NCBI GenBank assembly: GCA_002269645.1
Contig: NIVC01001579.1
Span: forward strand, 58,318-122,317
DNA: 64,000 nt
Direction of reading: 5' to 3'
DNA from: Macrostomum lignano
Lineage: Eukaryota
Made by a program: the position numbers and the translations under genes. Of this stretch, positions 7,418-44,966 are shown piece by piece. Every line of letters begins with the position of its first letter. Position 1 is the first letter of the stretch. The notes under the pieces are model-generated. The model had not been told where the DNA came from. It worked only from the letters and a program-made list of their open reading frames with translations, and ran no database searches.

Positions 7418-7666
7418 GAGCTCACTGAACACGTTCGAACTGAGAGACATTCACTGCAATGATTTATGACCCATACCCGAAGAACAAATGCCTATGTGTA
7501 TAATAGCTACAGAGCTTTGGCCCTGTCACAAAATACCACCAACCCGTGTGCTGTGCTGTTGTCTCTTTCTGATTTTGTCGATCAGCACAAAATCCTGACG
7601 CTGTTGTCAGTCAAGAAGAGAATTTCAAACCAGATTTTTAATGGAATTCTTCATTTGACTGACTTT

Positions 7667-9661
7667 ATGGCCGAGTGCAGTTCTGCAAGAGTGGCTGCTG
7701 CTGCAGTGAATGGGGATTCCCCACTTGATTGGCTTTGTTGTCTATGGCCGAGTGCAGTTCTGCAAGAGTGGCTGCTGCTGCAGTGAATGGGGATTCCCCA
7801 CTTGATTGGCTTTGTTGTCTATGGCCGAGTGCAGTTCTGCAACAGTGGCTGCTGCTGCAGTGAATGGGGATTCCCCACTTGATTGGCTTTATTGTCTATG
7901 GCCGAGTGCAGTTCTGCAACAGTGGCTGCTGCTGCAGTGAATGGGGATTCCCCACTTGATTGGCTTTATTGTCTATGGCCGAGTGCAGTTCTGCAACAGT
8001 GGCTGCTGCTGCAGTGAATGGGGATTCCCCACTTGATTGGCTTTATTGTCTATGGCCGAGTGCAGTTCTGCAACAGTAGCTGCTGCTGCAGTGAATGGGG
8101 ATTCCCCACTTGATTGGCTTTATTGTCTATGGCCGAGTGCAGTTCTGCAAGAGTGGCTGCTGCTGCAGTGAATGGGGATTCCCCACTTGATTGGCTTTAT
8201 TGTCTTTGGCCGAGTGCAGTTCTGCAAGAGTGGCTGCTGCTGCAGTGAATGGGGATTCCCCACTTGATTGGCTTTATTGTCTATGGCCGAGTGCAGTTCT
8301 GCAAGAGTGGCTGCTGCTGCAGTGAATGGGGATTCCCCACTTGATTGGCTTTATTGTCTATGGCCGAGTGCAGTTCTGCAAGAGTGGCTGCTGCTGCAGT
8401 GAATGGGGATTCCCCACTTGATTGGCTTTATTGTCTATGGCCGAGTGCAGTTCTGCAAGAGTGGCTGCTGCTGCAGTGAATGGGGATTCCCCACTTGATT
8501 GGCTTTATTGTCTATGGCCGAGTGCAGTTCTGCAACAGTGGCTGCTGCTGCAGTGAATGGGGATTCCCCACTTGATTGGCTTTATTGTCTATGGCCGAGT
8601 GCAGTTCTGCAAGAGTGGCTGCTGCTGCAGTGAATGGGGATTCCCCACTTGATTGGCTTTATTGTCTATGGCCGAGTGCAGTTCTGCAACAGTGGCTGCT
8701 GCTGCAGTGAATGGGGATTCCCCACTTGATTGGCTTTATTGTCTATGGCCGAGTGCAGTTCTGCAACAGTGGCTGCTGCTGCAGTGAATGGGGATTCCCC
8801 ACTTGATTGGCTTTATTGTCTATGGCCGAGTGCAGTTCTGCAAGAGTGGCTGCTGCTGCAGTGAATGGGGATTCCCCACTTGATTGGCTTTATTGTCTTT
8901 GGCCGAGTGCAGTTCTGCAAGAGTGGCTGCTGCTGCAGTGAATGGGGATTCCCCACTTGATTGGCTTTATTGTCTATGGCCGAGTGCAGTTCTGCAAGAG
9001 TGGCTGCTGCTGCAGTGAATGGGGATTCCCCACTTGATTGGCTTTATTGTCTATGGCCGAGTGCAGTTCTGCAAGAGTGGCTGCTGCTGCAGTGAATGGG
9101 GATTCCCCACTTGATTGGCTTTATTGTCTATGGCCGAGTGCAGTTCTGCAAGAGTGGCTGCTGCTGCAGTGAATGGGGATTCCCCACTTGATTGGCTTTA
9201 TTGTCTATGGCCGAGTGCAGTTCTGCAAGAGTGGCTGCTGCTGCAGTGAATGGGGATTCCCCACTTGATTGGCTTTATTGTCTATGGCCGAGTGCAGTTC
9301 TGCAAGAGTGGCTGCTGCTGCAGTGAATGGGGATTCCCCACTTGATTGGCTTTATTGTCTATGGCCGAGTGCAGTTCTGCAACAGTGGCTGCTGCTGCAG
9401 TGAATGGGGATTCCCCACTTGATTGGCTTTATTGTCTATGGCCGAGTGCAGTTCTGCAACAGTGGCTGCTGCTGCAGTGAATGGGGATTCCCCACTTGAT
9501 TGGCTTTATTGTCTATGGCCGAGTGCAGTTCTGCAACAGTGGCTGCTGCTGCAGTGAATGGGGATTCCCCACTTGATTGGCTTTATTGTCTATGGCCGAG
9601 TGCAGTTCTGCAACAGTGGCTGCTGCTGCAGTGAATGGGGATTCCCCACTTGATTGGCTTT
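7667..9661. repeat. 77-bp tandem array, about 26 copies
   Basis: Unit ATGGCCGAGTGCAGTTCTGCAA[G/C]AGTGGCTGCTGCTGCAGTGAATGGGGATTCCCCACTTGATTGGCTTTATTGTCT; first two starts at 7667 and 7744. Confidence 0.96.
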
Positions 9662-10011
9662 AATTATCAACCTGGCCGACAGAAACAACAATACTACTAT
9701 TCCTAGTAATATTCTCGACACGAAATTTCCCTATATAGTTTGCACAAAGCTCGCACAAAAGCATGGATGTTGTTACTCGCTGTTAATCTTTATGTATTAA
9801 TGATAACAATAAAAACAATGATAATCTCTAATACTCTCCCACAATACTACTTCCACGAAGTAGTTTATCGAAAAAATGAGTAAATATAACTGACAAATAA
9901 AAAAACTTCAGGAATGATTTTTCTAGCAATTTATGCTAGATAAAGTTACTCTCAGAATGTTCCTGCATAGCACAAAAAGATCACACTGAGGGATATTGTG
10001 GAGAGGACAAC

Positions 10012-11356
10012 AGCTGAGGGATATTGGGGATGAGGCAGCAGCTCACACTGAGGGATATTGGGGATGAGGCAGCAGCTCACACTGAGGGATATTGGGATGA
10101 GGCAGCAGCTCACACTGAGGGATACTGGGGATGAGGCAGCAGCTCACACTGAGGGATATTGGGGATGAGGCAGCAGCTCACACTGAGGGATATTGGGGAT
10201 GAGGCAGCAGCTCACACTGAGGGATACTGGGGATGAGGCAGCAGCTCACACTGAGGGATATTGGGGATGAGGCAGCAGCTCACACTGAGGGATATTGGGG
10301 ATGAGGCAGCAGCTCACACTGAGGGATATTGGGGATGAGGCAGCAGCTCACACTGAGGGATATTGGGGATGAGGCAGCAGCTCACACTGAGGGATATTGG
10401 GGATGAGGCAGCAGCTCACACTGAGGGATATTGGGGATGAGGCAGCAGCTCACACTGAGGGATATTGGGGATGAGGCAGCAGCTCACACTGAGGGATATT
10501 GGGGATGAGGCAGCAGCTCACACTGAGGGATACTGGGGATGAGGCAGCAGCTCACACTGAGGGATATTGGGGATGAGGCAGCAGCTCACACTGAGGGATA
10601 TTGGGGATGAGGCAGCAGCTCACACTGAGGGATATTGGGGATGAGGCAGCAGCTCACACTGAGGGATATTGGGGATGAGGCAGCAGCTCACACTGAGGGA
10701 TATTGGGGATGAGGCAGCAGCTCACACTGAGGGATATTGGGGATGAGGCAGCAGCTCACACTGAGGGATATTGGGGATGAGGCAGCAGCTCACACTGAGG
10801 GATATTGGGGATGAGGCAGCAGCTCACACTGAGGGATACTGGGGATGAGGCAGCAGCTCACACTGAGGGATATTGGGGATGAGGCAGCAGCTCACACTGA
10901 GGGATATTGGGGATGAGGCAGCAGCTCACACTGAGGGATACTGGGGATGAGGCAGCAGCTCACACTGAGGGATACTGGGGATGAGGCAGCAGCTCACACT
11001 GAGGGATACTGGGGATGAGGCAGCAGCTCACACTGAGGGATATTGGGGATGAGGCAGCAGCTCACACTGAGGGATATTGGGGATGAGGCAGCAGCTCACA
11101 CTGAGGGATATTGGGGATGAGGCAGCAGCTCACACTGAGGGATATTGGGGATGAGGCAGCAGCTCACACTGAGGGATATTGGGGATGAGGCAGCAGCTCA
11201 CACTGAGGGATATTGGGGATGAGGCAGCAGCTCACACTGAGGGATATTGGGGATGAGGCAGCAGCTCACACTGAGGGATACTGGGGATGAGGCAGCAGCT
11301 CACACTGAGGGATACTGGGGATGAGGCAGCAGCTCACACTGAGGGATATTGGGGAT
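10012..11356. repeat. 34-bp tandem array (GGGGATGAGGCAGCAGCTCACACTGAGGGATA[T/C]T), about 39 copies
   Basis: Directly visible period of 34. Confidence 0.96.
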
Positions 11357-11569
11357 GAAACAGAAACAGAAATTTGCAATCAAGCAGAAAAGAACCAAGA
11401 TGCTAAACAACAAAGTTTACTATCAACGAATACTTTTGTCGGCAGCAAAATGCAATTATCTTGTCCGAGAGAAACAGATGTTTTTTGAGGACTCATTTAC
11501 CGCCAATGATTGTGGCTCAAATTTATTTGACACAGACAGCCTGCTAAATGTGTGCGCTCGAAACATCAA

Positions 11570-13721
11570 TCAGTCTGAGTCGTACTCAACTGTCACCTTT
11601 GCTCGCTTCCTCGGCGGCGCGATGGCAGCCGCTCCTCTACTGCTGAGGGTCAGTTTCTGGCGCACCGGCGGCTCCTCTTCCTCGCCCTCCTCCTGCTGCT
11701 CCTGGATGTCTTCGATCTCCTCTTCAGATTCGTCAAAATCTTCCACGTATTCGGTTTCGCTTTCGGACTCGTCCTCCTCTTCTTCTTCAGACTCCTCGTC
11801 GTCCTCCTCGTCTTCAACTTCAACGGCCTGCAACGCTTTCTCGTAGGCGGCCCGGTCTACGTTGACGAACTCCTCGGGGTTGGCGGCCCGCAGCCTATCC
11901 AGCATCTCCTTCTCGATGGCGGTCTCCAGGCCGGCCCGAACCAGAGCCTTATCCTCTCGTCGACGTTCGCGACGTTCAACTTTGCGCGACAGCGGCACGA
12001 GCTTCGTCTCGGAGGTGAGCACCAGCCTGCGGCTGCGCTTCTGCACCTCAAGTAGGCGGTCGAATCTAAAAAAGGGGACGGGGCAAGGATCGCGAGGTAG
12101 CGGGCTTTTTGCAAAGTTGTTTACAATGCAGTGCACCCACAGACAGTGCACCCACAGACAGTGCACCCACAGACAGGGCACCTACAGACAGTGCACCCAC
12201 AGACAGTGCAGCACCTACAGGCAGGGCACCCACAGACAGTGCACCCACAGACAGTGCAGCACCTACAGGCAGGGCACCCACAGACAGTGCACGCACAAAC
12301 AGTGCAGCACCTACAGGCAGGGCACCCACAGACAGTGCACCCACAAACAGTGCAGCACCTACAGGCAGGGCACCCACAGACAGTGCACCCACAAACAGTG
12401 CAGCACCTACAGGCAGGGCACCCACAGACAGTGCACCCACAAACAGTGCAGCACCTACAGGCAGGGCACCCACAGACAGTGCACCCACAAACAGTGCAGC
12501 ACCTACAGGCAGGGCACCCACAGACAGTGCACCCACAAACAGTGCAGCACCTACAGGCAGGGCACCCACAGACAGTGCACCCACAAACAGTGCAGCACCT
12601 ACAGGCAGGGCACCCACAGACAGTGCACCCACAAACAGTGCAGCACCTACAGGCAGGGCACCCACAGACAGTGCACCCACAAACAGTGCAGCACCTACAG
12701 GCAGGGCACCCACAGACAGTGCACCCACAAACAGTGCAGCACCTACAGGCAGGGCACCCACAGACAGTGCACCCACAAACAGTGCAGCACCTACAGGCAG
12801 GGCACCCACAGACAGTGCACCCACAAACAGTGCAGCACCTACAGGCAGGGCACCCACAGACAGTGCACCCACAAACAGTGCAGCACCTACAGGCAGGGCA
12901 CCCACAGACAGTGCACCCACAAACAGTGCAGCACCTACAGGCAGGGCACCCACAGACAGTGCACCCACAAACAGTGCAGCACCTACAGGCAGGGCACCCA
13001 CAGACAGTGCACCCACAAACAGTGCAGCACCTACAGGCAGGGCACCCACAGACAGTGCACCCACAGACAGTGCAGCACCTACAGACAGTGCACCCACAGA
13101 CAGTGCAGCACCTACAGACAGTGCACCCACAGACAGTGCAGCACCTAAAGGCAGGGCACGACAGACAGTGCACCCACAGACAGGGCAATACAGACAGGGC
13201 ACCCACAGACAGGGCACCCACAGACAGGGCACCACAGACAGTGGACCAGGCAGGGCACCACAGACGGCACCAGACAGTGCACCCACAGACAGTGCACCCA
13301 TAGACAGTGTACGCACAGACAGTGCACCCACAGACAGGGCACCCACATACAGTGCACCGCAGACAGGGCAATACAGACAGGGCACCCACCTGGCAATAAC
13401 CCTCCGTCGAATCCAATTGTTCCAATAGATAAGCTTCTCTTTAATCTGGCCAATGGCCCGCTCGTAGTTTCGATGCAGTTTAACTCGCTCCCACATCTTG
13501 GCCGGCAGGTGGGCCCGCTCGGCCACCTTCATGTAGAGATAGATGACGCCGTCCTCCTCTCGGACGGTGGCATACTGGGAGTTGGCCAGCGGGCAAGAGT
13601 GCCGATTGCACAAGCCGGTCAAGTTGTACTCATTTCGACAAAACTTTGACGTTTTAGTCTTGGTCATAAAACTGCAGAAGCTGTTGTTTATAATCTGCCA
13701 TATTAAATCGTCGCTGTTCAT
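11570..13721 (-). CDS. MAK16: MAK16 ribosome biogenesis protein, 275 aa. Exons 13721-13390 and 12065-11570
   Basis: [17 protein letters not shown]...[41 protein letters not shown], then [21 protein letters not shown]...IEKEMLDRL and an acidic tail. The phase-2 GT-AG intron rejoins IAR|FDR. Confidence 0.95.
12127..13389. repeat. 48-bp higher-order minisatellite built from 15/18/15-bp subunits (GCACCCACAGACAGT core), filling the MAK16 intron
   Basis: 16-aa periodic translations in several frames; the array starts at the donor dinucleotide. Confidence 0.95.
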
Positions 13722-21059: not shown

Positions 21060-24000
21060 CTACGACACGACCCGCGTCTCGCTGGCCACCTTCTTGACCT
21101 CCTCTGGCGAGGCCTCCTTGTTGCTGAAGCTGCAGCGGATCTCCCGGCCGTGCCGGCTCATCACAGGCCGGAAGTTGTCCACCATTGGGCGCTTCTTGGC
21201 TTTGTCGAAAAAGGTCTTGGTGAACTTCAGCAGCTGGAGGAGGCGCATCGAGGGGTCAGGGGTTCGTTAGCTGTAGCTAATTGTACATTGGGTGTGTTGT
21301 ACAATTGTATGCATCCTGATCTACAGCCTGATGTACAGCCTGATCTACAGCTTGATCTACAGCCTGATCTACAGCCTGATCTACAGCCTGATCTACAGCC
21401 TGATCTACAGCCTGATCTACAGCCTGATCTACAGCCTGATCTACAGCCTGATGTACAGCTTGATCTACAGCTTGATCTACAGCCTGATCTATAGCCTGAT
21501 TTACAGCCTGATCTACAGCCTAATCTACAGCCTGATCTACAGCTTGATCTACAGCCTGATCTACAGCCTGATGTACAGCCTGATCTATAGCTTGATCTAC
21601 AGCCTGATCTACTACAGCCTGAACTACAGCCTGATCTATAGCCTGATCTACAGCCTGATCTACAGCTTGATCTACAGCCTGATCTATAGCTTGATCTACA
21701 GCCTGATCTACTACAGCCTGAACTACAGCCTGATCTATAGCCTGATCTACAGCCTGATCTACAGCCTGATGTACAGCCTGATCTACAGCCTGATGTACAG
21801 CCTGATCTACAGCCTGATTCATACCCAGATCTATAGCCTGATATGCACTATAAAGCCTGGTCTACAGCTGATCTACAGCTGATCTATAGCTTGATCTACA
21901 GCCTGATCTACAGCCTGATCTACAGCCTGATCTACAAGCCTGATCTACATAGCCTGGTCTACAGCTGATCTACAGCTGATCTACAGCTGATCTACAGCTT
22001 GATCTACAGCCTGGTCTACAGCTGATCTATAGCCTGATCTATAGCCTGATCTATAGCCTGATCTACAGCCTGATCTACAGCCTGATGTACAGCCTGATCT
22101 ACAACCTGATCTACAGTCTGATGTACAGCCTGATCTACAGCCTGATCTACAACCTGATCTACAGTCTGATGTACAGCCTGATCTACAGCCTGATCTACAA
22201 TCCTGATCTACAGTCTGATGTACAGCCTGATCTACAGCCTGATCTACAACCTGATCTACAGTCTGATGTACAGCCTGATCTACAGCCTGATCTACAATCC
22301 TGATCTACAGTCTGATGTACAGCCTGATCTACAGCCTGATCTACAACCTGATCTACAGTCTGATGTACAGCCTGATCTACAGCCTGATCTACAGTCTGAT
22401 GTACAGCCTGATCTACAGCCTGATCTACAACCTGATCTACAGTCTGATGTACAGCCTGATCTACAGCCTGATTTATACCCTGATCTATAGCCTGATATGC
22501 ACTATAAAGCCTGGTCTACAGCTGATCTACAGCCTGATCTACAGCCTGGTCTACAGCTGATCTATAGCCTGATCTATAGCCTGATCTATAGCCTGATCTA
22601 CAGCCTGATCTACAGCCTGATCTACAGCCTGATCTACAACCTGATCTACAGTCTGATGTACAGCCTGATCTACAGCCTGATCTACAATCCTGATCTACAG
22701 TCTGATGTACAGCCTGATCTACAGCCTGATCTACAACCTGATCTACAGTCTGATGTACAGCCTGATCTACAGCCTGATCTACAGTCTGATGTACAGCCTG
22801 ATCTACAGCCTGATCTACAACCTGATCTACAGTCTGATGTACAGCCTGATCTACAGCCTGATTTATACCCTGATCTATAGCCTGATATGCACTATAAAGC
22901 CTGGTCTACAGCTGATCTACAGCCTGATCTACAGCCTGGTCTACAGCTGATCTATAGCCTGATCTATAGCCTGATCTATAGCCTGATCTACAGCCTGATC
23001 TACAGCCTGATCTACAGCCTGATCTACAACCTGATCTACAGTCTGATGTACAGCCTGATCTACAGCCTGATCTACAATCCTGATCTACAGTCTGATGTAC
23101 AGCCTGATCTACAGCCTGATCTACAACCTGATCTACAGTCTGATGTACAGCCTGATCTACAGCCTGATTTATACCCTGATCTATAGCCTGATATGCACTA
23201 TAAAGCCTGGTCTACAGCTGATCTACAGCCTGATCTACAGCCTGGTCTACAGCTGATCTATAGCCTGATCTATAGCCTGATCTATAGCCTGATCTACAGC
23301 CTGATCTACAGCCTGATCTACAGCCTGATCTACAAACCTGATCTACAGCTGATCTACAGCTGATCTATTAGCTTGATCTATAGCTTCATCTATAGCCTAC
23401 AATAGGAAGAACTGTTTTGCGACTGCTCAACAAGGCTGAGAATCCTCATCAAAAATGACCAAACCGCTCACCAGCTCCTTCCGGATCTTCATGGAGTCGG
23501 TGAAGAGATGCCACTGCGCCACCGGGTTGCAGCTTGGGGTAGTGAAGGCGCCGTCGTAGTTCACGAACCGGTGCAGGCTCTCCGGCAGCAGGTCACGGAG
23601 CTGCAGCTCGACCGTCTCCACATCTGAGGAGTGCAGGTGGCTGCTTTGAGACGGGCTGCTCATGGAGTGCGTATGGATGCTCCACTGGGTCTTGGAGTGC
23701 TAAACTGGATCTTGGAGTGCTCAACTGGGTCTTGGAGTGCTCAACTGGGTCTTGGAGTGCTCAACTGGGTCTTGAAGTGCTCAATCGGATCTTGGAGTGC
23801 TCAACTGGGTAATGGAGTGCTCAACTGGGTCTTGAAGTGCTCAACTGAATCTTGGAGTGCTCAACTGGGTCATAGAGTGCTCAACTGGGTCATAGAGTGC
23901 TCAACTGAGTCTTGGAGTGCTCAACTGGGTCATAGAGTGCTCAACTGAGTCTTGGAGTGCTCAACTGGGTCTTGAAGTGCTCAACTGAATCTTGGAGTGC

Positions 24001-27000
24001 TCAACTGGGTCATAGAGTGCTCAACTGGGTCTTGAAGTGCTCAACTGGGTCTTGGAGTGCTCAACTGGGTCTTGGAGTGCTCAACTGGGTCTTGGAGTGC
24101 TCAACCGAATCTTGGAGTGCTCAACTGGGTAATGGAGTGCTCAACTGAGTCTTGGAGTGCTCAACTGGGTCTTGGAGTGCTCAACTGGATAATGGAGTGC
24201 TCAACTGGGTCTTGGAGTGCTCAACTGGGTCTTGGAGTGCTCAACTAGGTCATAGTGCTCAACTGGTTCTTGGAGTGCTCAATTGGGTCTTGGAGTGCTC
24301 AACTGAGTCTTGAAGTGCTCAAGTGAGTAATGGAGTGCTCAACTGGGTAATGAAGTGCTCAACTGGGTATTGGAGTGCTCAACCGAATCTTGGAGTGCTC
24401 AACTGGGTCATGAAGTGCTCAACTGGATCATGAAGTGCTCAACTGGGTATTGGAGTGCTCAACCGAATCTTTGAGTGCTCAACTGGGTCATAGAGTGCTC
24501 AACTGGGTCTTGGAGTGCTCAACTGGGTCTTGGAGTGCTCAAGTGAGTAATGGAGTGCTCAACTGGGTCTTGGAGTGCTCAACTGAGTCTTGAAGTGCTC
24601 AAGTGAGTAATGGAGTGCTCAACTGGGTATTGGAGTGCTCAACTGAATCTTGGAGTGCTCAACTGGGTCTGGGAGTGCTCAACTGGGTCTTGGAGTGCTC
24701 AACTGGGTCTTGGAGTGCTCAACTGGGTCATGAAGTGCTCAACTGGGTCTTGGAGTGCTCAACCAAATCTTGGAGTGCTCAAGTGGGTAATGGAGTGCTC
24801 AACTGGGTCTGGGAGTGCTCAACTGGGTCTGGGAGTGCTCAACTGGGTCTGGGAGTGCTCAACTAGGTCATAGTGCTCAACTGGTTCTTGGAGTGCTCAA
24901 TTGGGTCTTGGAGTGCTCAACTGAGTCTTGAAGTGTTCAAGTGGGTAATGGAGTGCTCAACTGGGTATTGGAGTGCTCAACTGAATCTTGGAGTGCTCAA
25001 CTGGGTCTTGAAGTGCTCAACTGGGTCTTGAAGTGCTCAACTGAATCTTGGAGAGCTCAACTGGGTCTTGAAGTGCTCAACTGGGTCTTGGAGAGCTCAA
25101 CTGAATCTTGGAGAGCTCAACTGAATCTTGGAGTGCTCAACTGAATATTGGAGTGCTCAACTGGGTAATGGAGTGCTCAGTTGGGTCATGTATTGGTTTC
25201 TGATTAATCTAATGTATCAAAACATGATTTTTTCAAGTAGATGCAGGTAGTCAGGTATCTACGTGAACTACAAGTTAAAACGCAGGTTGCTCCTGCCCTC
25301 CTAACAAGCTTTTACGTAGGAGGAAAAGCAGATTTTCATAAAGTTGATACAGCTACCTGAGGAAGTCAATACATGTAGTGTGTTTTCTGGCTACCACTGA
25401 TTATAAAAAAGTATAATAGTCATTTACTGGTAAACATACCCTTGGCTGACACAACAGCTCCGTGTCCCACGGGTTTGAAAAGTTCTGTCATGTTGGATAG
25501 CACCTGCGCGATCACGTGACCGGCCCAGCCGTCGTGGTCTTTAGGCTGAAATTGATTGAGGTTTGTGTCAGTCAGTGCGAGACTGCAGCGTGATGAAGGG
25601 GCGAAGGGCCAACCTGACTGAGGGGACGGAAACGCAGCTGACTGGGGGCGGAAATGCAGCTGACTGGGGGCGGAAACGCAGCTGACTGGGGGGCGGAAAA
25701 CGCAGCTGACTGGGGGCGGAAATGCAGCTGACTGGGGGCGGAAACGCAGCTGACTGGGGGCGGAAACGCTGTCTCCCACACGCAGACTTCAAGTACTCAC
25801 GTTCATCTGGTGGATGAAGCCGCCCAGCACAGTGATGGCGTCGGTGGTGTTGATGGCCTTCGACATGCTCAGCTCCTGCCTCTTGCACACGATGTGCACC
25901 TCCATGGGCGTCGGGAGCGCCTTGCCGGTGGCGTCAAACAGCCGGTGCTCGCTGCCGATGCCCTTCTCGACGTTGGCGGCGCTGCCCCAGTGGAAGTGGA
26001 ACTGGAAGCAGTTGTAGGTGCCGTTGAGGTGGCCTCCGGTCACCGTCAGGTCGGCGCTGTTCACCGCGTCAGCTTGGACTGGAGAGGAGAGGATGCACAG
26101 GCTAAGGATCGGACAGGTGATTCTCAGGATGTTGAATGTTCTTCATGAGTTCTAATTGGCTCTTTTTGGTTAGTGGCGAGTAGCACTGGCTCTGGCATGT
26201 GATTTCTAAGCTGTAGCATGTGATTTCTAAGCTGTAGCATGTGATTTCTAAGCTGTAGCATGTGATTTCTAAGCTGTAGCATGTGATTTCTAAGCTGTAG
26301 CATGTGATTTCTTAGCTCTAATAGGTGCCTTATAGACTCTAACAGCACTCTGATGTCCTATGGTACAAATGTCTTCTCAGATTTTGCAGGTGTGTTCTGA
26401 CCTCAGCAGCTAATGTGCTTTTTAAGGTAGTGCCCTGCCTTCCTACAGAGCATCAACTCACTGGAGTGTCCGTTGTTCTTCACAATGAACTTTCTCTCAT
26501 CGTGCCAGCCCTTGCCCAGTACGATTTTCTTCACCTTGGCCGACTTGTTCTTGCAGAGTCCCATCTCGATGTTGATGGGCGAGGGCCGGTTGGCCGGGAG
26601 GTCCTTGCAGAATGGGCTAATCTGCCACCACTTGGGCGGGGCTGCGGGGTGGTCAGATGTATAAGACGACTTGCCTCCTCTTGGCAACAATAATTTAGCA
26701 AATTTGAGCAGTTTGCAGTTTTCATGGCAACAAAACACCACTCGGTCTTACCGAACTCGCAGTGAGGACCGCGCGCGTTCTCGTAGGCGGGGTTGTACAC
26801 GAAAGCTTTGGTCTCGCAGGGAATGACTGCGTTAGGTGGGTTGAGGCACAGTGTTAGTAGTGCATGTTTGTAAGTCAAAAAGGCGGGTTTGAGAAGATGT
26901 CAACATACGAGTATATAGATTCTGTGGTGACTGTGTGACAGTGACACAAGACTGTAACTGAGCTACATGTACATAGAGTAGGGTAGACTGAGTGAGTAAG

Positions 27001-28546
27001 AAGTCAGAGAATAAGAGACACATTGAGAGCCAGGGAGAGACGCAGGGACAAAGAAGGACGGAGAGAGATGCAGAGAGAGACGGAGAGACGGAGAGATAGA
27101 AAGAGACGAGAGAGAGACAAAGAGACAAAGAGAAAGACTGAGAGAGCGACGGAGGGAGAGGTCGAAGAGAGAAGTACTGGCAAAGTAGAAGTTTCAAATG
27201 TGAGATAATATGAAAATGAGCTACTAATTGATGTCAAAATTAGATCGGGCTTTATTTGATGCGGTGTGGATGAGAATTAATCAAGTCAGTTTGCTTTACG
27301 CAAGAAAACCGAAGAGTTAGCTTTCATTATTACATCGAGTACACTGTCGTTGGGCTCAGATAAAAAGTGAGTTAGCTCCCATTGCGCTCGTGCTATGCAT
27401 GGTTAATTGGTTAGTGACAGATGATACGTCTAGAAGCCTTACGGGCACAGTCGATCTTCCACGACGAGTCCTGGTCGTACAGCTTGGTCTCGGCCCAGCG
27501 TTCCAGCCGCAGCTTGAACTCGCTGTGCCGGATGTAGTGGCGAGGGTTCCTCAGGGATTGCAGTCGCACGTATCCGTTGCTCATGATGACTACCTTAAAG
27601 GTGGAGGCGTTCCTGAACTCTGCCGTGTTTTCGAACTTTGTCATCATGACGAAGTGGTCGGCAACCGTGTTGAGGAAGTGGCCAGGCTTCTCAGCTGACT
27701 CGATGGACACGGCTCGAGGATTGCCGTTCAGAGCAGGCGTGACGAACTTCAGTCTGGTGCCGTTGGTGGTGCTGATGGTGGAGATCACGTCGATACCGGC
27801 CTTGACGGAGTATTTGGGATAATTCTTCGAGATCAGATGGAACTCGCCGTCGCAAACGTCCAGCTTGAACAGTTTGTCTGTAACAAATTCAAGTCTTTGT
27901 AGTTTTCTATCCAGAAAAAAACCAACGAAAACTTTCTGTCCCTGGGAGGCATACAAGAAACAAGCGACTTACCGCTTGCGCAGACAACTCCGAACGATGA
28001 ATCAGCCTTGAACAGGTTGGTATCTGTCCAGCTCATGAGCTTCAGCTTCATTGACTGATGTCTCAGGTAATGCTTGGAGTGCGTCGTACTCTTGAATCGA
28101 TAGTAGCCTTCCCCAGCCTTCTCAAGCAGGAACGAGGCCTCCCGGTTGAACAGCGCGCTCTTGTCGGTTTTCACCAACTTGATGATGTTGTCGACGTTGC
28201 ACAGGAAGTAGCCCGGCTGAGACAGCGACTCCAGCGAAATGCCGTCCTTTGTTCCATCAAGAGCGTCCCGCTCAACAAACCTGGTCCCGTTGCCAATGGC
28301 GATGCCCATCTCGCCGTTGCCCCTCTGGGTCAGGTAGTAAGTTGGGAAGTTGTACGAATTGAAGATCACAGCATTTGGGCACATTTCTGCAACGAAGACA
28401 CAGTGGAAAAGCGTGATGGACGGTACAGCAGGCTGGTTAAATTTCCTGAAGCAGTCGTAATTCTATTAATTAGAAAACTTACTCTTAGCCATCGAGGCCT
28501 GAACGCAGGCCACCAGAAGAGCCGTCAGCAGCAGGAACGGACGCAT
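21060..28546 (-). CDS. Secreted fusion protein, 637 aa: signal peptide + two AbfB/CBM42-like beta-trefoil domains + alpha-carbonic anhydrase. Exons 28546-28483, 28386-27973, 27877-27443, 26826-26752, 26677-26462, 26078-25801, 25545-25440, 23623-23472, 21233-21060
   Basis: Signal peptide [21 protein letters not shown]. AbfB-type motifs ISLES..QPGYFL, HYLRH....KL...ADSSF and HYIRH...DQDSSW. CA motifs [45 protein letters not shown]. All 8 introns are GT-AG and phase-compatible (1914 nt). Confidence 0.85.
21316..23398. repeat. 12-bp minisatellite (CAGCCTGATCTA) with about 390-bp higher-order repeats, last intron of the CA gene
   Basis: Visible 12-bp period; identical ORF pairs offset by 390 nt (22315/22705, 22497/22887). 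Confidence 0.95.
23684..25190. repeat. 20-bp minisatellite (GGAGTGCTCAACTGGGTCTT), about 75 diverged copies, CA intron
   Basis: Directly visible. Confidence 0.95.
25615..25770. repeat. 22-bp minisatellite (GGGGGCGGAAACGCAGCTGACT), about 6 copies, CA intron
   Basis: Directly visible. Confidence 0.9.
26195..26318. repeat. 21-bp minisatellite (GCATGTGATTTCTAAGCTGTA), about 6 copies, CA intron
   Basis: Directly visible. Confidence 0.9.
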
Positions 28547-34344: not shown

Positions 34345-36645
34345 ATGTCTAGTAAATCAGAATCTGAGCACTCTCTTTCTACTAATTACTCAGCCTACTC
34401 TTGTCAGGCGATTTCTTCTCCCTCAAATAGTTTTTCTACAAGTAATAGGAGTTCAATTTCAAGCGAAGCCGGTGTAACGCACTCGCACAGCTGTCCTGAC
34501 GCTGTGGAAACTTTTATTGGTGAAAACAATGCTGTGCCTGTGCTTGAGGAGAGTTCAGATAGCTTAGCGAATTTGGCTTCCATCTCAGATCCCAGTGTGC
34601 AGGCGGCTCTGATTTTTCAGTGGGCAATTACTTCCGGAGTTTCAGAGGCTGCTCTTGATAGACTCCTGAAGCTACTTTCTATTTTTAGTAGAGATTCTCT
34701 AGCTCTTCCAAATAGCGTCAAGTTGCTCAAATCATTGATTCAAGATACTTGCCCTCTTGATGATAGTGACGTGTCTGAATTTGGCTTTTGCCCAGAATGC
34801 AAAAGCCAGTGTCAGGTTCATTCCCCAAAGTCAAAGGTTGCTGTGACACAGCTCAATATTGTTCCACAGCTGCGGACTATCTTAAGCAGCCACACTTCAA
34901 CTATTCTGCAGTATGAGCAAGAATTGCAAAAGGATAAAAACACAGACGTTTTGAATTCCAAAATAGTTAAAGAACAAGGCTTAAGCCTATCTTCTGGCAA
35001 GTCGCTTCACTTGCATCTTCTAATCTCAGCTGATGGCGCCAATTTTTTTGAATCTGTTCAGAGTAGCTTTTGGCCATTTCAGGCTCAACTTCTAAACCTT
35101 CCTGTTTACATCCGTCAACGCTTTGCAAATTTAATTCTAATTGCTCTTGTTTCATCGAAGGCAGTCCCGCATTTCCAGTCTTTTCTGTCTGAAATTATGA
35201 ACAATTTGCCAAAACAGTTTATATTCTCGGAATACACCGTTCATGTCCATTACACACTCTTTGTTTGTGACTTGCCCGCTCTTGCTAAGCTCTTCTGCAT
35301 TCACCAGTACAATGGTGCGTTTAGCTGTCCTAGGTGCTTGCACCCAGGTGAGAGCTTTAAAGTATCCGAGAAAGGTAAAAACTGGATCTTCCGCTATGGT
35401 GAAGGCTACTTGTTTCCTTTGAGAAACCCATCTTCCCATCTTGAACACTGTCGGCTCGCACAAATTCGAAATCGGCCTGTTTTTGGCGTAAAGATGCGCA
35501 GTTGCTTGTTAGACTATGTTCCGTTTCCCAGCTGCAATCCTATTGACAGTTTACACTGCTTTTTCGAAGGCCACACCAAGTATCTACTAGAAGAGCTGTC
35601 ATTACCTGCAAACAGGCGCGAGTTGTATTTTTGCTCAGCTAATTGCATGGATTTCATATCTAATTGTATTCGTCAATCTATAACTCCTTCTAGCATCACA
35701 ATCAACACAAATTTTAAAGGCTTTTCAGATTGGAAAGCAAAGCATTTTAAAAACTTTGCGCTATACTTTCTTCTTCCTACGTTTTTGCAGAGAATTTCGC
35801 ATTTTCCATTGAAACTGCTGTTAACTAATTTAGTTCTTATTTATCACATGTTGTATAGCCCCCAATCAAATAAGACTGATATCGAAAAGCTATGCAAAGC
35901 TTTTATCTCCAATGCTCAGCAAATATTCGGACCGAAAGTACTCCGCCTTAATTTCCACCTGCTTTTGCATATGGCTGAACAGTACGAATTGTACGGACCT
36001 GTATTTAATTATTCTATGTTCGCATTTGAGAGCTCCATTGGCATGTTCAAAAAGTTCTTATGCGGAACTGTGTCATTTGGCCCACAGCTTGTTCGCAAGT
36101 TTTTGTTTCAAAAGTTGCTACATCACTACTTTTCTTGTGTTAAGGACTCTATTGTAGTGGATGCAGTTAACTCTATATCTTTAGAGCCATCCAGGCCACA
36201 TGGTATTCTTCGAAACTCACTTGCTTATTTTAATGGACATTTTTTCTCGACAAGCTCAGCTTGTGCGTCGAAAAATTCTAACCATCTTTGCCAATTGAAG
36301 TCCGGCGAAATCTGCACTATTGCAGAGTTCCTCGAGCCTAATACTATTCGAGTGCAAATTTTGGATCCCATTGGTTCGCTGTTTGATTTTGTTTTACGAG
36401 TACCAGCAGCAACTTTCCCCATCGATTTACTTAATTGGAAAGCATTGCTGGAATCCATGTTCAAAAAGTCTTCGACATTCAATTTTGTATTGATATCCCT
36501 GTCTAATGCGCCCAGATCGGCCAGACGCGAACGTATAGTTAATTTTTCAGAGGTCGATCGACCCTGCATCGCTGTTCCAGTAGAATCGTTCAGCAAAGAC
36601 TGTTATTGCGCTGTGCCATTGTTCAAAGAGTTTGAACATGATTAA
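34345..36645 (+). CDS. EnSpm/CACTA-type DDE transposase, 766 aa, uninterrupted
   Basis: Motifs LISADGA, SFWP...LNLP...R, FVCDLPA, YNGAFSCPRC, PIDSLH, WKA.HF, NFHLLLH..EQ...YGPV...SMFAFES. Confidence 0.9.
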   Translation: MSSKSESEHSLSTNYSAYSCQAISSPSNSFSTSNRSSISSEAGVTHSHSCPDAVETFIGENNAVPVLEESSDSLANLASISDPSVQAALIFQWAITSGVSEAALDRLLKLLSIFSRDSLALPNSVKLLKSLIQDTCPLDDSDVSEFGFCPECKSQCQVHSPKSKVAVTQLNIVPQLRTILSSHTSTILQYEQELQKDKNTDVLNSKIVKEQGLSLSSGKSLHLHLLISADGANFFESVQSSFWPFQAQLLNLPVYIRQRFANLILIALVSSKAVPHFQSFLSEIMNNLPKQFIFSEYTVHVHYTLFVCDLPALAKLFCIHQYNGAFSCPRCLHPGESFKVSEKGKNWIFRYGEGYLFPLRNPSSHLEHCRLAQIRNRPVFGVKMRSCLLDYVPFPSCNPIDSLHCFFEGHTKYLLEELSLPANRRELYFCSANCMDFISNCIRQSITPSSITINTNFKGFSDWKAKHFKNFALYFLLPTFLQRISHFPLKLLLTNLVLIYHMLYSPQSNKTDIEKLCKAFISNAQQIFGPKVLRLNFHLLLHMAEQYELYGPVFNYSMFAFESSIGMFKKFLCGTVSFGPQLVRKFLFQKLLHHYFSCVKDSIVVDAVNSISLEPSRPHGILRNSLAYFNGHFFSTSSACASKNSNHLCQLKSGEICTIAEFLEPNTIRVQILDPIGSLFDFVLRVPAATFPIDLLNWKALLESMFKKSSTFNFVLISLSNAPRSARRERIVNFSEVDRPCIAVPVESFSKDCYCAVPLFKEFEHD

Positions 36646-44600: not shown

Positions 44601-44966
44601 GGACAGCTGGCGCCACAGCGAGGCATCAGCCTGTTCGGGCAGCTCGGCGCTGAGCAGCTGCTCAAGAGCGTCCAGCCGGCCGGCCCTGGCCGCGGCCAGG
44701 AGAGCCCAGGTGGCCAGGCTGGGGCTCTGCACCGCCAGGGAGACCAGCGGCTCCGGCAACTGCTGGCACCGCTCGAGCTCGTCCTCCAGTAGGAGGCGAG
44801 CGGCACCGGCGGCCGAGGCTTCAACGGCTGCATTCAGAAGTTTGAGACGAGTCGAACCAGCATCAGCAACGTCCAGGAGCTCGGCCAATCTGTCCGGATT
44901 GTCCGAACGAACGGCTGCGAGAATTTCTTCGGGCTTAGCGGAGGTCGCAGCGGCTGAAGACGTCAT
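41617..44966 (-). CDS. TRPM-like transient receptor potential cation channel, about 763 aa. Exons 44966-43299 and 42240-41617; further 5' exons possible
   Basis: Pre-S1 FFA..CFVELVDRRW and SPREKF; six hydrophobic segments; S4-S5 KFGPFINMM; pore RPLLLAFGEL; S6 VVNLLLINLLIAKF; TRP-box-like W..YRYQLLLEF..LPPP. Confidence 0.82.
42340..42800 (+). pseudogene. Decayed PIF/Harbinger (DDE_Tnp_4, HARBI1-like) transposase fragment in the TRPM intron
   Basis: Across frames: VID*SH, NYNHSINVQAI....FLDV and WTGSVHDSRIFCNSDLY; contains stops and frameshifts. Confidence 0.75.
42935..43250. repeat. 20-bp minisatellite (CCCACTGTCTGTAGTCAAAC), decaying toward the donor, TRPM intron
   Basis: Directly visible. 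Confidence 0.9.

What the first reader, a model, noticed from the sequence alone, without database searches (positions are those of the whole stretch)
21060..28546. Secreted tandem-AbfB (CBM42) / alpha-carbonic anhydrase fusion protein
Seen: nine exons splice in phase into signal peptide + AbfB + AbfB + complete alpha-CA. The CA retains the proton-shuttle motif NNGH, three Zn ligands (QFHFHWG, EVHIV), SEH and the gatekeeper TTP. There is no C-terminal TM or GPI-type hydrophobic tail. Established: AbfB/CBM42 is a glycan-binding beta-trefoil of microbial arabinofuranosidases, also found in animal otogelin-type matrix proteins. Inference: an enzyme that tethers CO2/bicarbonate chemistry to an extracellular glycan matrix (mucus, adhesive, statolith or eggshell). 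I do not know this architecture from characterised proteins.
Basis: partly seen in the sequence, partly recalled or inferred. Interest (0 to 1): 0.75.

Follow-up and report, generated by a model that had tools for sequence, protein, structure and literature searches.

The report
Flatworm lectin-tagged secreted carbonic anhydrase
This is a real, expressed gene of the flatworm Macrostomum lignano: a secreted carbonic anhydrase carrying two sugar-binding-type modules, a combination found only in Macrostomum and apparently built by exon shuffling; it is already in the databases but nobody has studied it.

Summary
On the minus strand, 28546..21060, nine GT-AG exons splice in phase. One junction needs correcting: exon 5 starts at 26641, not 26677. 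The corrected 625-aa product is identical to GenBank PAA66219.1 (Macrostomum lignano Mlig012818g2, "hypothetical protein").

The protein has a signal peptide, two AbfB/CBM42 beta-trefoils (one exon each), a CA IV-like alpha-carbonic anhydrase with all catalytic residues, and a conserved hydrophilic tail. It has no TM or GPI signal.

The fusion is shown at three levels:
- **Transcript:** an intronless contig from a relative (71% identity; dN/dS 0.06-0.23 in every module).
- **Peptide:** IDCALIPCETK spans the AbfB2/CA exon junction in published footprint proteomics of M. lignano.
- **Genome:** three copies share the same exon structure.

Among the top 150 hits from 1.84 billion representative proteins, only Macrostomum proteins combine AbfB and CA. 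A CA-only paralog has the same intron positions and phases but lacks the two phase 1-1 AbfB exons, which points to exon shuffling.

Only the gamma sugar pocket (Arg-His...Asp) survives in each AbfB domain. The closest CA relatives mostly carry GPI-type tails, and this protein does not. Most likely it is an extracellular CA held on glycans by lectin modules. Glycan binding, catalytic activity and tissue location are untested. It is a new variant of a known kind, of moderate interest.

The parts
28483..28546 (-). Exon 1 (64 nt): start codon and signal peptide ([18 protein letters not shown]...). It ends in phase 1.
   Evidence: The only KD-19 windows above 1.6 are at residues 1-3. The ortholog also starts with a hydrophobic leader.
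27973..28386 (-). Exon 2 (414 nt, phase 1-1): exactly one AbfB/CBM42 beta-trefoil (AbfB1, aa 22-159), bracketed by Cys24 and Cys157. The gamma pocket R130-H131...D150 is kept. The beta pocket is lost (C84-N85, E104).
   Evidence: Pfam. Pocket columns in alignment A4. AF2 pLDDT of about 90 on the ortholog. Foldseek to CBM42.
27443..27877 (-). Exon 3 (435 nt, phase 1-1): the second AbfB/CBM42 beta-trefoil (AbfB2, aa 160-304), bracketed by Cys168 and Cys303. The gamma pocket R276-H277...D296 is kept. The beta pocket is lost (N229-T230, A250).
   Evidence: MS peptide [13 protein letters not shown] covers aa 165-177.
26752..26826 (-). Exon 4 (75 nt, phase 1-1): N-terminal strand of the CA domain, not a mere linker. 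It carries Cys308...Cys327 and the F-V-Y315 motif that aligns to W5-G-Y7 of hCA II.
   Evidence: Alignment A5. MS peptides IDCALIPCETK (spans the exon 3/4 junction) and [12 protein letters not shown]. dN/dS 0.06.
26462..26641 (-). Exon 5 (180 nt, phase 1-1), with the corrected acceptor at 26641. It carries Cys341 (= Cys23) and the proton-shuttle motif N385-N386-G-H388.
25801..26078 (-). Exon 6 (278 nt): Q415, zinc ligands H417, H419 and H451, E433-H434, E449, V453, V473.
25440..25545 (-). Exon 7 (106 nt): a variable surface segment of the CA domain.
23472..23623 (-). Exon 8 (152 nt): Y540, F544 (position of Leu198), T545-T546-P547, Cys549 (= Cys203), W555.
21060..21233 (-). Exon 9 (174 nt): end of the CA domain (N588, R590, C602), a conserved hydrophilic 21-aa tail ([21 protein letters not shown]) and the TAG stop.
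   Evidence: tail 86% identical in the ortholog; no hydrophobic tail.
21315..25187 (.). Intronic minisatellites: a 12-nt unit x175 in intron 8 (21315-23398) and a 20-nt unit x76 in intron 7 (23674-25187). Smaller arrays lie in intron 6 (25614-25769) and intron 5 (26195-26317). They are not coding.
   Evidence: The lengths of these introns differ among the three genomic copies.

Best explanation
The locus is Macrostomum lignano gene Mlig012818 (copy g2). It encodes a secreted, disulfide-rich, N-glycosylated mosaic protein of 625 aa. In order, it has a signal peptide, two CBM42/AbfB beta-trefoil modules, a CA IV-like extracellular alpha-carbonic anhydrase with a complete catalytic apparatus, and a conserved hydrophilic tail.

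**Origin (inferred from gene structures).** An AbfB module bounded by phase-1 introns was inserted, and then duplicated, in the phase-1 intron between the signal-peptide exon and the first CA exon of a Macrostomum-specific CA4-like gene.

**Mechanism (inferred).** After secretion, the one surviving sugar pocket of each trefoil (gamma: R130/H131/D150 and R276/H277/D296) binds terminal sugars. The two pockets make the protein bivalent and hold it on the worm's own secreted glycan layer (surface mucus, glycocalyx or adhesive footprint material). This takes over the job that a GPI anchor does for most of its closest CA relatives. The zinc site (H417, H419, H451; E433/T545; shuttle H388) then interconverts CO2, bicarbonate and protons locally. 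That would buffer pH and speed CO2 and acid-base exchange in the boundary layer of an animal that has no respiratory or circulatory organs.

**Shown:** gene model, domain composition, conserved residues, purifying selection, existence of the fused protein, and its presence in a footprint sample.

**Inferred:** secretion, glycan binding, catalytic activity, the identity of the ligand, and the physiological role.
For: **Gene model.**
- Nine in-phase GT-AG exons.
- The product is identical to PAA66219.1.
- The window is 100% identical to NIVC01001579.1, and exact spliced mapping gives the same exons in all three assembly copies.

**The fusion is real.**
- A 2370-nt intronless contig from a relative encodes the whole architecture in one ORF.
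- The fully tryptic peptide IDCALIPCETK (aa 301-311) spans the AbfB2/CA exon junction. With two further unique peptides, it was recorded in the sheet 'footprints_Trypsin_intact_1' of Dataset S2 of PMC6410801.

**Selection.** dN/dS is 0.20 (AbfB1), 0.23 (AbfB2), 0.06 (exon 4), 0.15 (CA) and 0.15 (tail).

**Domains.**
- Pfam hits for both families.
- The AbfB domains fold with pLDDT of about 90. They superpose on CBM42 structures 3kmv and 9fnk at TM 0.87 and rmsd 1.6-1.7 A.

**Sugar pockets.**
- In AtAbf43C CBM42, arabinofuranose is held by His, Tyr and Asp in the beta and gamma pockets (PMC12493170).
- In 18 tandem-AbfB homologs, the Arg-His...Asp triad is invariant in the beta and gamma pockets of both domains.
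- Both Macrostomum species keep it only in gamma1 and gamma2.

**CA active site.** All residues that are invariant in 49 relatives are present, including Y7, N62, H64, Q92, H94, H96, E106, E117, H119, T199, T200, W209 and the Cys23-Cys203 pair.

**Secretory features.** N-terminal hydrophobic leader only, 12 Cys conserved in the ortholog, and 4 conserved sequons.

**Loss of the usual anchor.** Of the 49 closest non-Macrostomum relatives, 32 have a hydrophobic GPI-type C-terminus and 7 are borderline. The Macrostomum proteins have none.

**Exon shuffling.**
- CA-only paralog Mlig032849 has exons of 73/78/180/278/118/152/120 nt, with the same phases as window exons 1, 4, 5, 6, 7, 8 and 9.
- Exons 2 and 3 are symmetric phase 1-1.
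- In Hydractinia, each AbfB module is 435 nt bounded by phase-1 introns, after a signal exon that ends in phase 1.

**Precedent for AbfB in animal secreted matrices.** Otogelin (PMC4948705) and Hydra basal-disc-specific AbfB proteins (PMC5080974).
Against: - No experiment shows secretion, glycan binding or CO2 hydration.
- The footprint sample also contains ribosomal proteins, calmodulin, profilin and sperm-tail proteins. Presence there does not prove that the protein is secreted onto the substrate.
- The beta pockets are destroyed in both domains. The gamma pockets have lost the canonical Tyr (Met in AbfB1, Phe in AbfB2) and Asn (Ser, Glu), so affinity and specificity are unknown.
- The canonical CBM42 ligand, arabinofuranose, is not a known animal sugar (my own knowledge).
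- Position 198 is Phe. It is Leu in 49 of 49 relatives. In human CA III, Phe198 lowers activity (my own knowledge). V207 is Ala and Q28 is Pro.
- The transcript id was not found in the positional, germline/neoblast and seminal-fluid supplements as held. No expression site is known.
Confidence: 0.5

Rival explanations
1. The protein is a soluble secreted CA whose trefoils are not lectins. The two AbfB modules have lost sugar binding. They would act as a protein-binding, oligomerising or stabilising double-trefoil scaffold, and the enzyme would work free in a lumen (gut, protonephridia, antrum or seminal fluid).
For: - The beta pockets are lost in both domains and both species. The gamma pockets lack the canonical Tyr and Asn.
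- The tandem trefoil also resembles fascin, which is not a lectin.
- The CA-only paralog shows that a soluble secreted form of this CA exists without any tether.
Against: - The Arg-His...Asp triad of gamma1 and gamma2 is exactly what stays conserved between two species at dS of about 1. These are the nearly invariant columns of the whole family.
- Both AbfB exons are under purifying selection.
- The best double-trefoil structural matches, HA33 and amaranthin, are lectins.
Confidence: 0.2
2. The protein is a lectin-CA aimed at foreign glycans. The gamma pockets would bind furanosides that animals do not make (arabinofuranose or galactofuranose on diatom, plant-detritus or bacterial biofilm polysaccharides). 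The enzyme would then be deposited on food or on the colonised substrate, with a digestive, antimicrobial or substrate-conditioning role, rather than on the worm's own matrix.
For: - Characterised CBM42 modules bind terminal arabinofuranose of arabinan and arabinoxylan (PMC12493170).
- The protein is recovered from material left on a surface.
- Hydra AbfB proteins are specific to the substrate-contacting basal disc.
- M. lignano feeds on diatoms (my own knowledge).
Against: - Nothing indicates ligand identity.
- The substitutions in the pocket argue against unchanged arabinofuranose specificity.
- Otogelin carries AbfB in a purely endogenous matrix.
- No rationale for a CA on food particles has been tested.
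Confidence: 0.2
3. The CA domain is a weak or non-catalytic binding module, as in the receptor tyrosine phosphatase gamma/zeta CA-like domains or the CA-related proteins. The whole protein would then be an adhesive or matrix protein, not an enzyme.
For: Phe at position 198, Ala at 207 and Pro at 28 are unusual for the family. The protein turns up in an adhesive-footprint sample.
Against: All three zinc histidines, E106, T199, E117, Q92 and the H64 shuttle are intact and conserved in the ortholog and the paralog. CA-related proteins typically lack one or more zinc histidines (my own knowledge). dN/dS of 0.15 fits a constrained enzyme.
Confidence: 0.06
4. The fusion is an annotation artefact: two adjacent genes (an AbfB-only gene and a CA gene with its own promoter in the 616-nt intron 3) have been read as one.
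For: Intron 3 is the longest of the 5' introns. Several UniProt models of this locus are visibly faulty.
Against: - Peptide IDCALIPCETK spans the junction.
- The ortholog transcript is one ORF.
- Exon 4 starts in phase 1 and has no start codon or signal of its own.
- The exon structure is identical in three copies.
Confidence: 0.01

Closest known systems
Vertebrate-type CA IV and invertebrate 'CA4-like' extracellular alpha-carbonic anhydrases
   Same: They are the best-scoring non-Macrostomum relatives. They share the signal peptide, the Cys23-Cys203 pair, an extra N-terminal Cys pair, and a full catalytic site with the His64 shuttle.
   Different: This protein has no hydrophobic GPI-signal tail. 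It has two N-terminal AbfB modules, Phe instead of Leu198, and a conserved hydrophilic 21-aa tail.
CBM42-bearing arabinofuranosidases (GH54 AkAbfB 1wd3; GH43 SaAraf43A 3akf-3aki; AtAbf43C 9nxg-9nxi; CtCBM42A 3kmv)
   Same: The same module family and fold (Pfam; Foldseek TM 0.84-0.87). The same logic applies: a sugar-binding trefoil appended to a catalytic domain to place it on a glycan.
   Different: The catalytic partner is a carbonic anhydrase, not a glycosidase. The module is duplicated in tandem. Only the gamma pocket triad survives, and its Tyr and Asn are replaced. The host is an animal.
Animal multi-AbfB secreted proteins (Hydractinia, Hydra, Clytia, Clavelina) and otogelin
   Same: They are the closest AbfB relatives by score. 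They have a signal peptide followed by tandem AbfB modules, with module boundaries in intron phase 1. They are associated with secreted matrices and adhesive tissue.
   Different: They carry no enzyme domain and keep both the beta and gamma triads. None of them contains a CA domain.
Other alpha-CAs with non-catalytic extracellular add-ons (CA IX proteoglycan-like domain; nacrein and other biomineral-matrix CAs)
   Same: The general principle is the same: an extracellular CA is positioned by an extra module or repeat (my own knowledge).
   Different: The add-on here is a folded lectin-type domain pair. There is no TM segment, no acidic or Gly-Asn repeats, and no evidence of biomineralisation in this animal.
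Double beta-trefoil lectins (botulinum HA33, amaranthin)
   Same: The tandem-trefoil N-terminal half resembles them structurally (TM of about 0.45 normalised to the target). The predicted sugar binding is bivalent.
   Different: Sequence identity is only 7-13%. They belong to a different trefoil family and are not fused to an enzyme.

Membership tests
Alpha-carbonic anhydrase (Pfam PF00194) | Sequence matches the family profile above the curated threshold | tested here: met
   158.1 bits against a cut-off of 27, covering profile positions 3-254 of 254. hCA II chains match at E of about 1e-24.
Alpha-carbonic anhydrase (Pfam PF00194) | Three zinc-binding histidines (H94, H96, H119) with second-shell Q92 and E117 | tested here: met
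   H417, H419, H451, Q415 and E449. The columns are invariant or nearly invariant in 53 sequences.
Alpha-carbonic anhydrase (Pfam PF00194) | Gatekeeper pair E106-T199 and proton shuttle H64 | tested here: met
   E433, T545 and H388 in the motif NNGH.
Alpha-carbonic anhydrase (Pfam PF00194) | Canonical hydrophobic CO2 pocket (V121, V143, L198, W209) | tested here: inconclusive
   V453, V473 and W555 are kept, but position 198 is Phe. It is Leu in 49 of 49 relatives, and Phe also in the paralog. The effect on rate is unknown.
Alpha-carbonic anhydrase (Pfam PF00194) | Measured CO2-hydration activity inhibited by sulfonamides | not testable with these tools
   Needs recombinant protein.
CA IV-like membrane-tethered extracellular CA | Signal peptide and the Cys23-Cys203 disulfide pair | tested here: met
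   N-terminal hydrophobic leader. C341 and C549 sit in columns that are Cys in 48 of 49 relatives. Pairing itself was not observed.
CA IV-like membrane-tethered extracellular CA | C-terminal hydrophobic GPI-attachment signal | tested here: not met
   The maximum KD-13 of the last 30 residues is -0.23. It exceeds 1.8 in 32 of 49 relatives. The protein is related to this group but is not a GPI-anchored member of it.
CBM42 / AbfB domain (Pfam PF05270) | Sequence matches the family profile above the curated threshold | tested here: met
   117.6 bits against a cut-off of 22.8, in two stretches. PDB CBM42 chains 3kmv, 9fnk, 3akf and 9nxi are hit.
CBM42 / AbfB domain (Pfam PF05270) | Beta-trefoil fold | tested here: met
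   AF2 on the ortholog gives pLDDT of about 85-97 over both domains. Foldseek gives TM 0.84-0.87 and rmsd 1.6-1.9 A to 3kmv, 9fnk and 9nxi.
CBM42 / AbfB domain (Pfam PF05270) | Sugar-contacting Arg-His...Asp triad in the beta pocket | tested here: not met
   AbfB1 has C84-N85...E104 and AbfB2 has N229-T230...A250. The triad is lost in the ortholog too, and invariant in 18 of 18 homologs.
CBM42 / AbfB domain (Pfam PF05270) | Sugar-contacting Arg-His...Asp triad in the gamma pocket | tested here: met
   R130-H131...D150 and R276-H277...D296. The accompanying Tyr is replaced by Met or Phe, and the Asn by Ser or Glu.
CBM42 / AbfB domain (Pfam PF05270) | Binding of terminal alpha-L-arabinofuranose | not testable with these tools
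   Needs glycan array or ITC.
Exon-shuffled mosaic extracellular protein (class 1-1 modules) | Each inserted domain is encoded by a symmetric phase 1-1 exon set, placed in a phase-1 intron of the recipient gene | tested here: met
   Exons 2 and 3 are 1-1 and each equals one domain. In the CA-only paralog the signal exon joins the first CA exon in phase 1, with the same downstream intron positions. The Hydractinia AbfB modules are also bounded by phase-1 introns.
Component of the Macrostomum adhesive footprint | Detected in footprint material | tested here: inconclusive
   Three unique peptides occur in one footprint sheet of PMC6410801 Dataset S2. The same sheet holds many intracellular proteins, and the stored files are truncated.
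Component of the Macrostomum adhesive footprint | Expression in adhesive or releasing gland cells; adhesion phenotype on knock-down | not tested
   No expression data were found.

The most novel reading that the evidence does not exclude
The lectin-anchored carbonic anhydrase is a working enzymatic component of the flatworm's temporary-adhesion or mucus secretion. It would be fixed by its gamma pockets to the glycosylated adhesive or to the substrate biofilm. There it would set local pH and bicarbonate and so help control how the glue sets or lets go. AbfB modules would then be a shared substrate- or matrix-binding device of animal adhesive secretions (Hydra basal disc, Macrostomum footprints).
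Probability: 0.12. Interest if true: 0.7.

Novelty: new variant of a known kind. Interest (0 to 1): 0.45.

Why it matters
Extracellular carbonic anhydrases are normally positioned by a GPI anchor, a transmembrane helix or acidic matrix repeats. This would be a fourth solution: a lectin-type tether. It appears to have arisen recently in one flatworm genus, and the donor-type module, the recipient-type paralog and the product can all be compared intron by intron. That makes it a clean natural example of exon shuffling creating a new enzyme-targeting architecture.

Macrostomum lignano has RNAi, transgenesis and in situ methods, so the predictions are cheap to test: where the protein sits, what it binds, and what happens to acid-base exchange or adhesion without it. 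It also offers a way to learn what animal AbfB domains bind, including those of otogelin and the cnidarian basal-disc proteins, which is not known.

The finding does not overturn anything. The sequence is already public, and both domains are ordinary members of their families.

Tried and rejected
Rejected in favour of 26641.
- **UniProt models A0A1I8HD97, HFW3, HDX5 and FLP6.** Not used as references. They read through the 5' UTR, skip VKNNGHS, or are frame-shifted.
- **Looking for the AbfB+CA architecture elsewhere.** The top 150 of 2753 hits were mapped domain by domain. All non-Macrostomum high scorers are tandem-CA or tandem-AbfB proteins.
- **Looking for an AbfB-only donor gene in M. lignano.** None was found, within the limits of a word-indexed search.
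- **A mixed alignment of AbfB and CA homologs for one full-length AF2 run.** The AbfB rows were misaligned. The AbfB-only alignment gave good trefoils but a poor CA half.
- **Literature.** There was nothing relevant for Macrostomum plus carbonic anhydrase, AbfB plus carbonic anhydrase, Mlig012818 or RNA815_2810 in main texts. There was no hit in the held supplements of the seminal-fluid screen, the positional RNA-seq, or the neoblast/germline study. A search for flatworm ammonia excretion and mucus CA gave nothing usable.
- **Window neighbours.** MAK16, an HMG-box gene, transposase ORFs, a TPR protein and a channel-like ORF give no functional link and no tandem copy of the gene.
- **Statolith or eggshell biomineral role.** No evidence of any kind was found, so it was not pursued.

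Full report
**1. What is in the sequence**

The minus strand of the window was read between 29200 and 20500. An ATG sits at 28546, a TAG ends at 21060, and nine open segments lie between them, flanked by GT...AG.

Pfam finds two AbfB (PF05270) stretches (E 5.5e-34) and a full-length Carb_anhydrase domain (PF00194, E 4e-46). Human CA II chains match at about 1e-24.

**2. Organism, existing annotation, and one correction**

A homolog search identified the source as the free-living flatworm Macrostomum lignano. The cluster holds three GenBank proteins of 625 aa, BOX15_Mlig012818g1, g2 and g3, all named 'hypothetical protein'. It also holds several UniProt models named 'carbonic anhydrase'.

These proteins, and a 632-aa ortholog from another species, read ...CEF|APPKWW. 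It follows a better pyrimidine tract (tacatctgaccaccccgcag).

With exon 5 starting at 26641, the product is 625 aa and identical to PAA66219.1 (g2). The window gene is base-for-base identical to NIVC01001579.1 of assembly GCA_002269645.1. An independent exact spliced mapping gives:
- exons of 64/414/435/75/180/278/106/152/174 nt;
- introns of 96/95/616/110/383/255/1816/2238 nt.

Copies g1 and g3 have the same exons. Their introns 5-8 differ in length, and those are the introns filled with minisatellites.

**3. Is the fusion real?**

Three independent lines say yes.
- **Transcript.** Ortholog P0002 lies on a 2370-nt Logan contig (SRR30276812) with 5' and 3' UTRs and no introns. A transcript therefore carries signal, AbfB, AbfB and CA in one ORF.
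- **Peptides.** Dataset S2 of Wunderer et al. 2019 (PMC6410801) is the mass spectrometry of adhesive footprints. Its sheet 'footprints_Trypsin_intact_1' lists transcript RNA815_2810.1 (Pfam CA) with three peptides. All three are unique, fully tryptic matches to this protein: [13 protein letters not shown] (aa 165-177, AbfB2), [12 protein letters not shown] (312-323, exon 4) and IDCALIPCETK (301-311). The last one spans the exon 3/exon 4 junction, which is the AbfB-to-CA join.
- **Selection.** Against the ortholog (71% identity, dS of about 1), every module is under purifying selection. dN/dS is 0.20 for AbfB1, 0.23 for AbfB2, 0.06 for exon 4, 0.15 for CA and 0.15 for the C-terminal tail.

The 'two genes' alternative is therefore excluded for practical purposes.

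**4. Anatomy of the protein**

*Signal and secretory features.* The only hydrophobic 19-residue window is at the N-terminus. There is no TM segment and the C-terminus is hydrophilic. Twelve of fourteen Cys and four N-glycosylation sequons are conserved in the ortholog. Cleavage after Ala17 or Ser18 is read by eye from the (-3,-1) rule; no predictor was available.

*AbfB modules.* Exon 2 encodes AbfB1 (aa 22-159, Cys24...Cys157). Exon 3 encodes AbfB2 (aa 160-304, Cys168...Cys303). An AF2 model of the ortholog, built on an alignment of tandem-AbfB homologs, gives pLDDT of about 85-97 for both domains. Foldseek superposes a single domain on CBM42 structures 3kmv, 9fnk and 9nxi (TM 0.84-0.87, rmsd 1.6-1.9 A, 28-31% identity). 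The pair of domains matches double-trefoil lectins such as botulinum HA33.

In the arabinofuranose complex of AtAbf43C CBM42, the sugar is held by His, Tyr and Asp in the beta pocket and by His, Asn, Tyr and Asp in the gamma pocket. The alpha pocket is non-functional (PMC12493170). In an alignment with 18 tandem-AbfB homologs, the Arg-His...Asp triad is invariant (18 of 18) in the beta and gamma pockets of both domains.

The Macrostomum proteins of both species keep the triad only in the gamma pockets:
- gamma1 is R130-H131...D150 and gamma2 is R276-H277...D296, in M. lignano numbering;
- the beta pockets have become C/V-N...E/D (AbfB1) and N-T...A (AbfB2);
- the gamma Tyr is Met in AbfB1 and Phe in AbfB2, and the gamma Asn is Ser or Glu.

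The prediction is one candidate sugar site per trefoil, so the protein is bivalent, with unknown and probably altered specificity.

[quoted passage not shown] F-V-Y315 aligns with W5-G-Y7 of CA II. Cys308 and Cys327 bracket a loop, as in CA IV-type enzymes (my own knowledge for the CA IV disulfides).

In a 53-sequence alignment, all invariant or nearly invariant catalytic columns are occupied correctly:

| M. lignano residue | hCA II position |
|---|---|
| N385, N386 | N61, N62 |
| H388 | H64 |
| Q415 | Q92 |
| H417, H419 | H94, H96 |
| E433, H434 | E106, H107 |
| E449 | E117 |
| H451 | H119 |
| V453, V473 | V121, V143 |
| Y540 | Y194 |
| T545, T546, P547 | T199, T200, P201 |
| W555 | W209 |
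| N588, R590 | N244, R246 |
| C341, C549 | 23, 203 |

Three positions are peculiar to the Macrostomum subfamily: Phe544 at position 198 (Leu in 49 of 49 others), Ala553 at 207, and Pro349 at 28. Phe198 is the CA III state and lowers turnover there (my own knowledge). The enzyme may therefore be slower than CA II or CA IV, but nothing suggests it is dead.

The CA half of the AF2 model is not confident because its alignment was shallow. The CA statements therefore rest on sequence alignment.

*Tail.* The last 21 residues ([21 protein letters not shown]) are 86% identical in the ortholog and absent from the CA-only paralog. Their role is unknown.

**5. Distribution**

The exhaustive HMMER search used the ortholog against 1.84 billion representatives. 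It gave 2753 hits at E of 1e-3 or better. Local domain mapping of the best 150 shows that only Macrostomum entries carry both AbfB and CA.

Every other high scorer falls in one of two groups:
- a tandem-CA protein (for example fish 'CA4-like' proteins or the slug Arion);
- a tandem-AbfB protein (Clavelina, Hydra, Clytia, Hydractinia, Maribacter).

A fused protein with even about 30% identity in both parts would have ranked near the top. Caveat: clustering at 50% hides how many Macrostomum species have the gene. The species behind SRR30276812 is also unknown.

**6. Origin**

M. lignano has a CA-only paralog, Mlig032849g1. It is 332 aa, 66% identical over the CA part, and has its own signal peptide and the same Cys-loop N-terminus. 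Its exons are 73/78/180/278/118/152/120 nt, with the same phases as window exons 1, 4, 5, 6, 7, 8 and 9.

The only structural difference is the two exons 2 and 3. Both are symmetric phase 1-1, each is exactly one domain, and they sit in the phase-1 intron after the signal exon.

In the Hydractinia two-AbfB gene, the signal exon also ends in phase 1. Each AbfB module there is 126+309 = 435 nt bounded by phase-1 introns. That is the same length as window exon 3.

The two Macrostomum AbfB domains are each other's closest relatives (34% identity), and each has its ortholog in the second species (a rough NJ tree).

The simplest history is this: a class 1-1 AbfB module was inserted into a secreted CA4-like gene, the module was duplicated in tandem, and all of this happened before the two species split. 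Secondary loss of the AbfB exons in the paralog cannot be excluded. No AbfB-only gene of M. lignano was found (that search has limited sensitivity).

**7. How it most likely works**

The nearest non-Macrostomum relatives are CA4-like. Of 49 of them, 32 end in a hydrophobic GPI-type tail and 7 more are borderline. The Macrostomum proteins have none.

I therefore read the AbfB pair as a replacement tether. The secreted enzyme is held by two gamma pockets on a glycan layer, and it catalyses CO2/bicarbonate/proton interconversion there. The likely site is the worm's external mucus, glycocalyx or adhesive secretion. Two observations point that way:
- the peptides come from footprint material;
- animal AbfB proteins are otherwise found in secreted matrices, namely otogelin (PMC4948705) and Hydra basal-disc-specific transcripts (PMC5080974).

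A boundary-layer CA would buffer surface pH and speed CO2 and acid-base exchange. Mucus CA on fish gills is the physiological analogy (my own knowledge).

All of this is inference. The footprint sample also contains ribosomal, cytoskeletal and sperm proteins, so it is not a clean secretome. No expression site could be found in the literature held.

The rivals are:
- trefoils that no longer bind sugar (a soluble luminal CA);
- a foreign-glycan target (diatom or biofilm furanosides);
- a non-catalytic CA domain;
- an annotation artefact (excluded).

**8. Comparison and verdict**

The protein is a member of the alpha-CA family and of the AbfB/CBM42 family by every sequence and fold criterion tested. 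It is related to GPI-anchored CA IV-type enzymes but fails the anchor criterion. Its AbfB modules fail the beta-pocket criterion and meet the gamma-pocket one.

It works like a CBM-targeted enzyme, but the 'cargo' is a carbonic anhydrase. That combination has not been described and was found only in Macrostomum.

The sequence is public and auto-annotated, so this is not a discovery of a gene. It is a new variant of a known kind: a well-supported, lineage-specific mosaic with a clear and testable mechanism. Both parts are ordinary, no function is shown, and no open question hinges on it. It is not negligible either, because the architecture is unique in a very large search, the exon-shuffling history is unusually legible, and the host is an experimentally tractable model.

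Noticed in passing
window 21315-23398, 23674-25187, 25614-25769, 26195-26317: Introns 8, 7, 6 and 5 of the gene are largely minisatellite arrays: a 12-nt unit x175, a 20-nt unit x76, a 22-nt unit x7 and a 21-nt unit x6. The same introns differ in length among the three genomic copies (for example intron 8 is 2238, 2322 or 737 nt), so the arrays are unstable.
   Followed up: partly
window, whole (e.g. 1680-2177, 5347-5883, 6361-6870, 7666-9662, 9981-11358, 12128-13341, 46991-48297, 54307-55162, 61055-62039): The window carries about 17 separate high-scoring minisatellite arrays (units of 12-96 nt, up to 2 kb each). Together they make up roughly a fifth of the sequence. Many produce long spurious ORFs in all frames.
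   Followed up: partly
window about 11570-13721 (-): The next gene downstream is MAK16 (Ribosomal_L28e/Mak16 Pfam hits; annotated as 273 aa in GenBank). A 48-nt minisatellite (12128-13341) lies between its N-terminal and acidic C-terminal coding parts.
   Followed up: partly
window 34345-36645 (+): An intact single 766-aa ORF has transposase-type hits (DUF1258, DUF4218 below its cut-off, Transposase_21 below its cut-off). It may be a young DNA transposon.
   Followed up: partly
window 58210-60623 (+): Two overlapping ORFs (437 and 395 aa) lie here. The second carries a hAT C-terminal dimerisation domain. It looks like a frame-shifted hAT-type transposase.
   Followed up: partly
window 41617-44975 (-): Large ORFs (646 and 232 aa) have no Pfam hit. 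By eye their sequence looks like the transmembrane and pore part of a TRP-type cation channel.
   Followed up: no
window 4659-5285 (+) and 56329-57096 (-): There is an HMG-box ORF (E 6.6e-10) in a low-complexity Ala/Gly/Gln-rich frame, and a TPR-repeat ORF of 255 aa. Neither has an apparent link to the CA gene.
   Followed up: partly
L002 574-738 and 1463-1579 (NIVC01000032.1): About 4.4 kb upstream of the CA-only paralog Mlig032849g1 lie the last two exons of another, near-identical CA copy (91-97% identity). The CA-only paralog therefore seems to sit in a tandem array.
   Followed up: no
P0058 (UniProt A0A1I8G9Z6) and P0011 (A0A1I8GEY2): P0058 is an 86-aa fragment of an apparently separate M. 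lignano paralog (63% identical, same Cys-loop and CA N-terminus). UniProt calls it 'Kringle domain-containing protein', but Pfam gives only a weak CA hit. P0011 seems to be a faulty model of the CA-only paralog, with the NNGH segment skipped. Several UniProt models of the AbfB-CA gene are also faulty: 5' UTR read-through, VKNNGHS skipped, or frame-shifted.
   Followed up: partly
P0012-P0023 and P0173-P0182 (hits): Many animals (teleost fish 'CA4-like', gastropods, bivalves, copepods) encode proteins with two to four tandem alpha-CA domains. Some predicted proteins have 8-17 CA-like stretches.
   Followed up: no
L003 (Hydractinia symbiolongicarpus CM055236.1): In this cnidarian two-AbfB gene, every intron is in phase 1. 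Each AbfB domain is split 126+309 nt at the same internal position. This suggests an ancient, regular module structure for animal AbfB genes.
   Followed up: partly
PMC5080974 (Hydra basal disc study): The authors treat the basal-disc AbfB transcripts as glycosyl hydrolases. The AbfB Pfam domain is the carbohydrate-binding module (CBM42), not the catalytic domain, so these are more likely lectin-type proteins.
   Followed up: no
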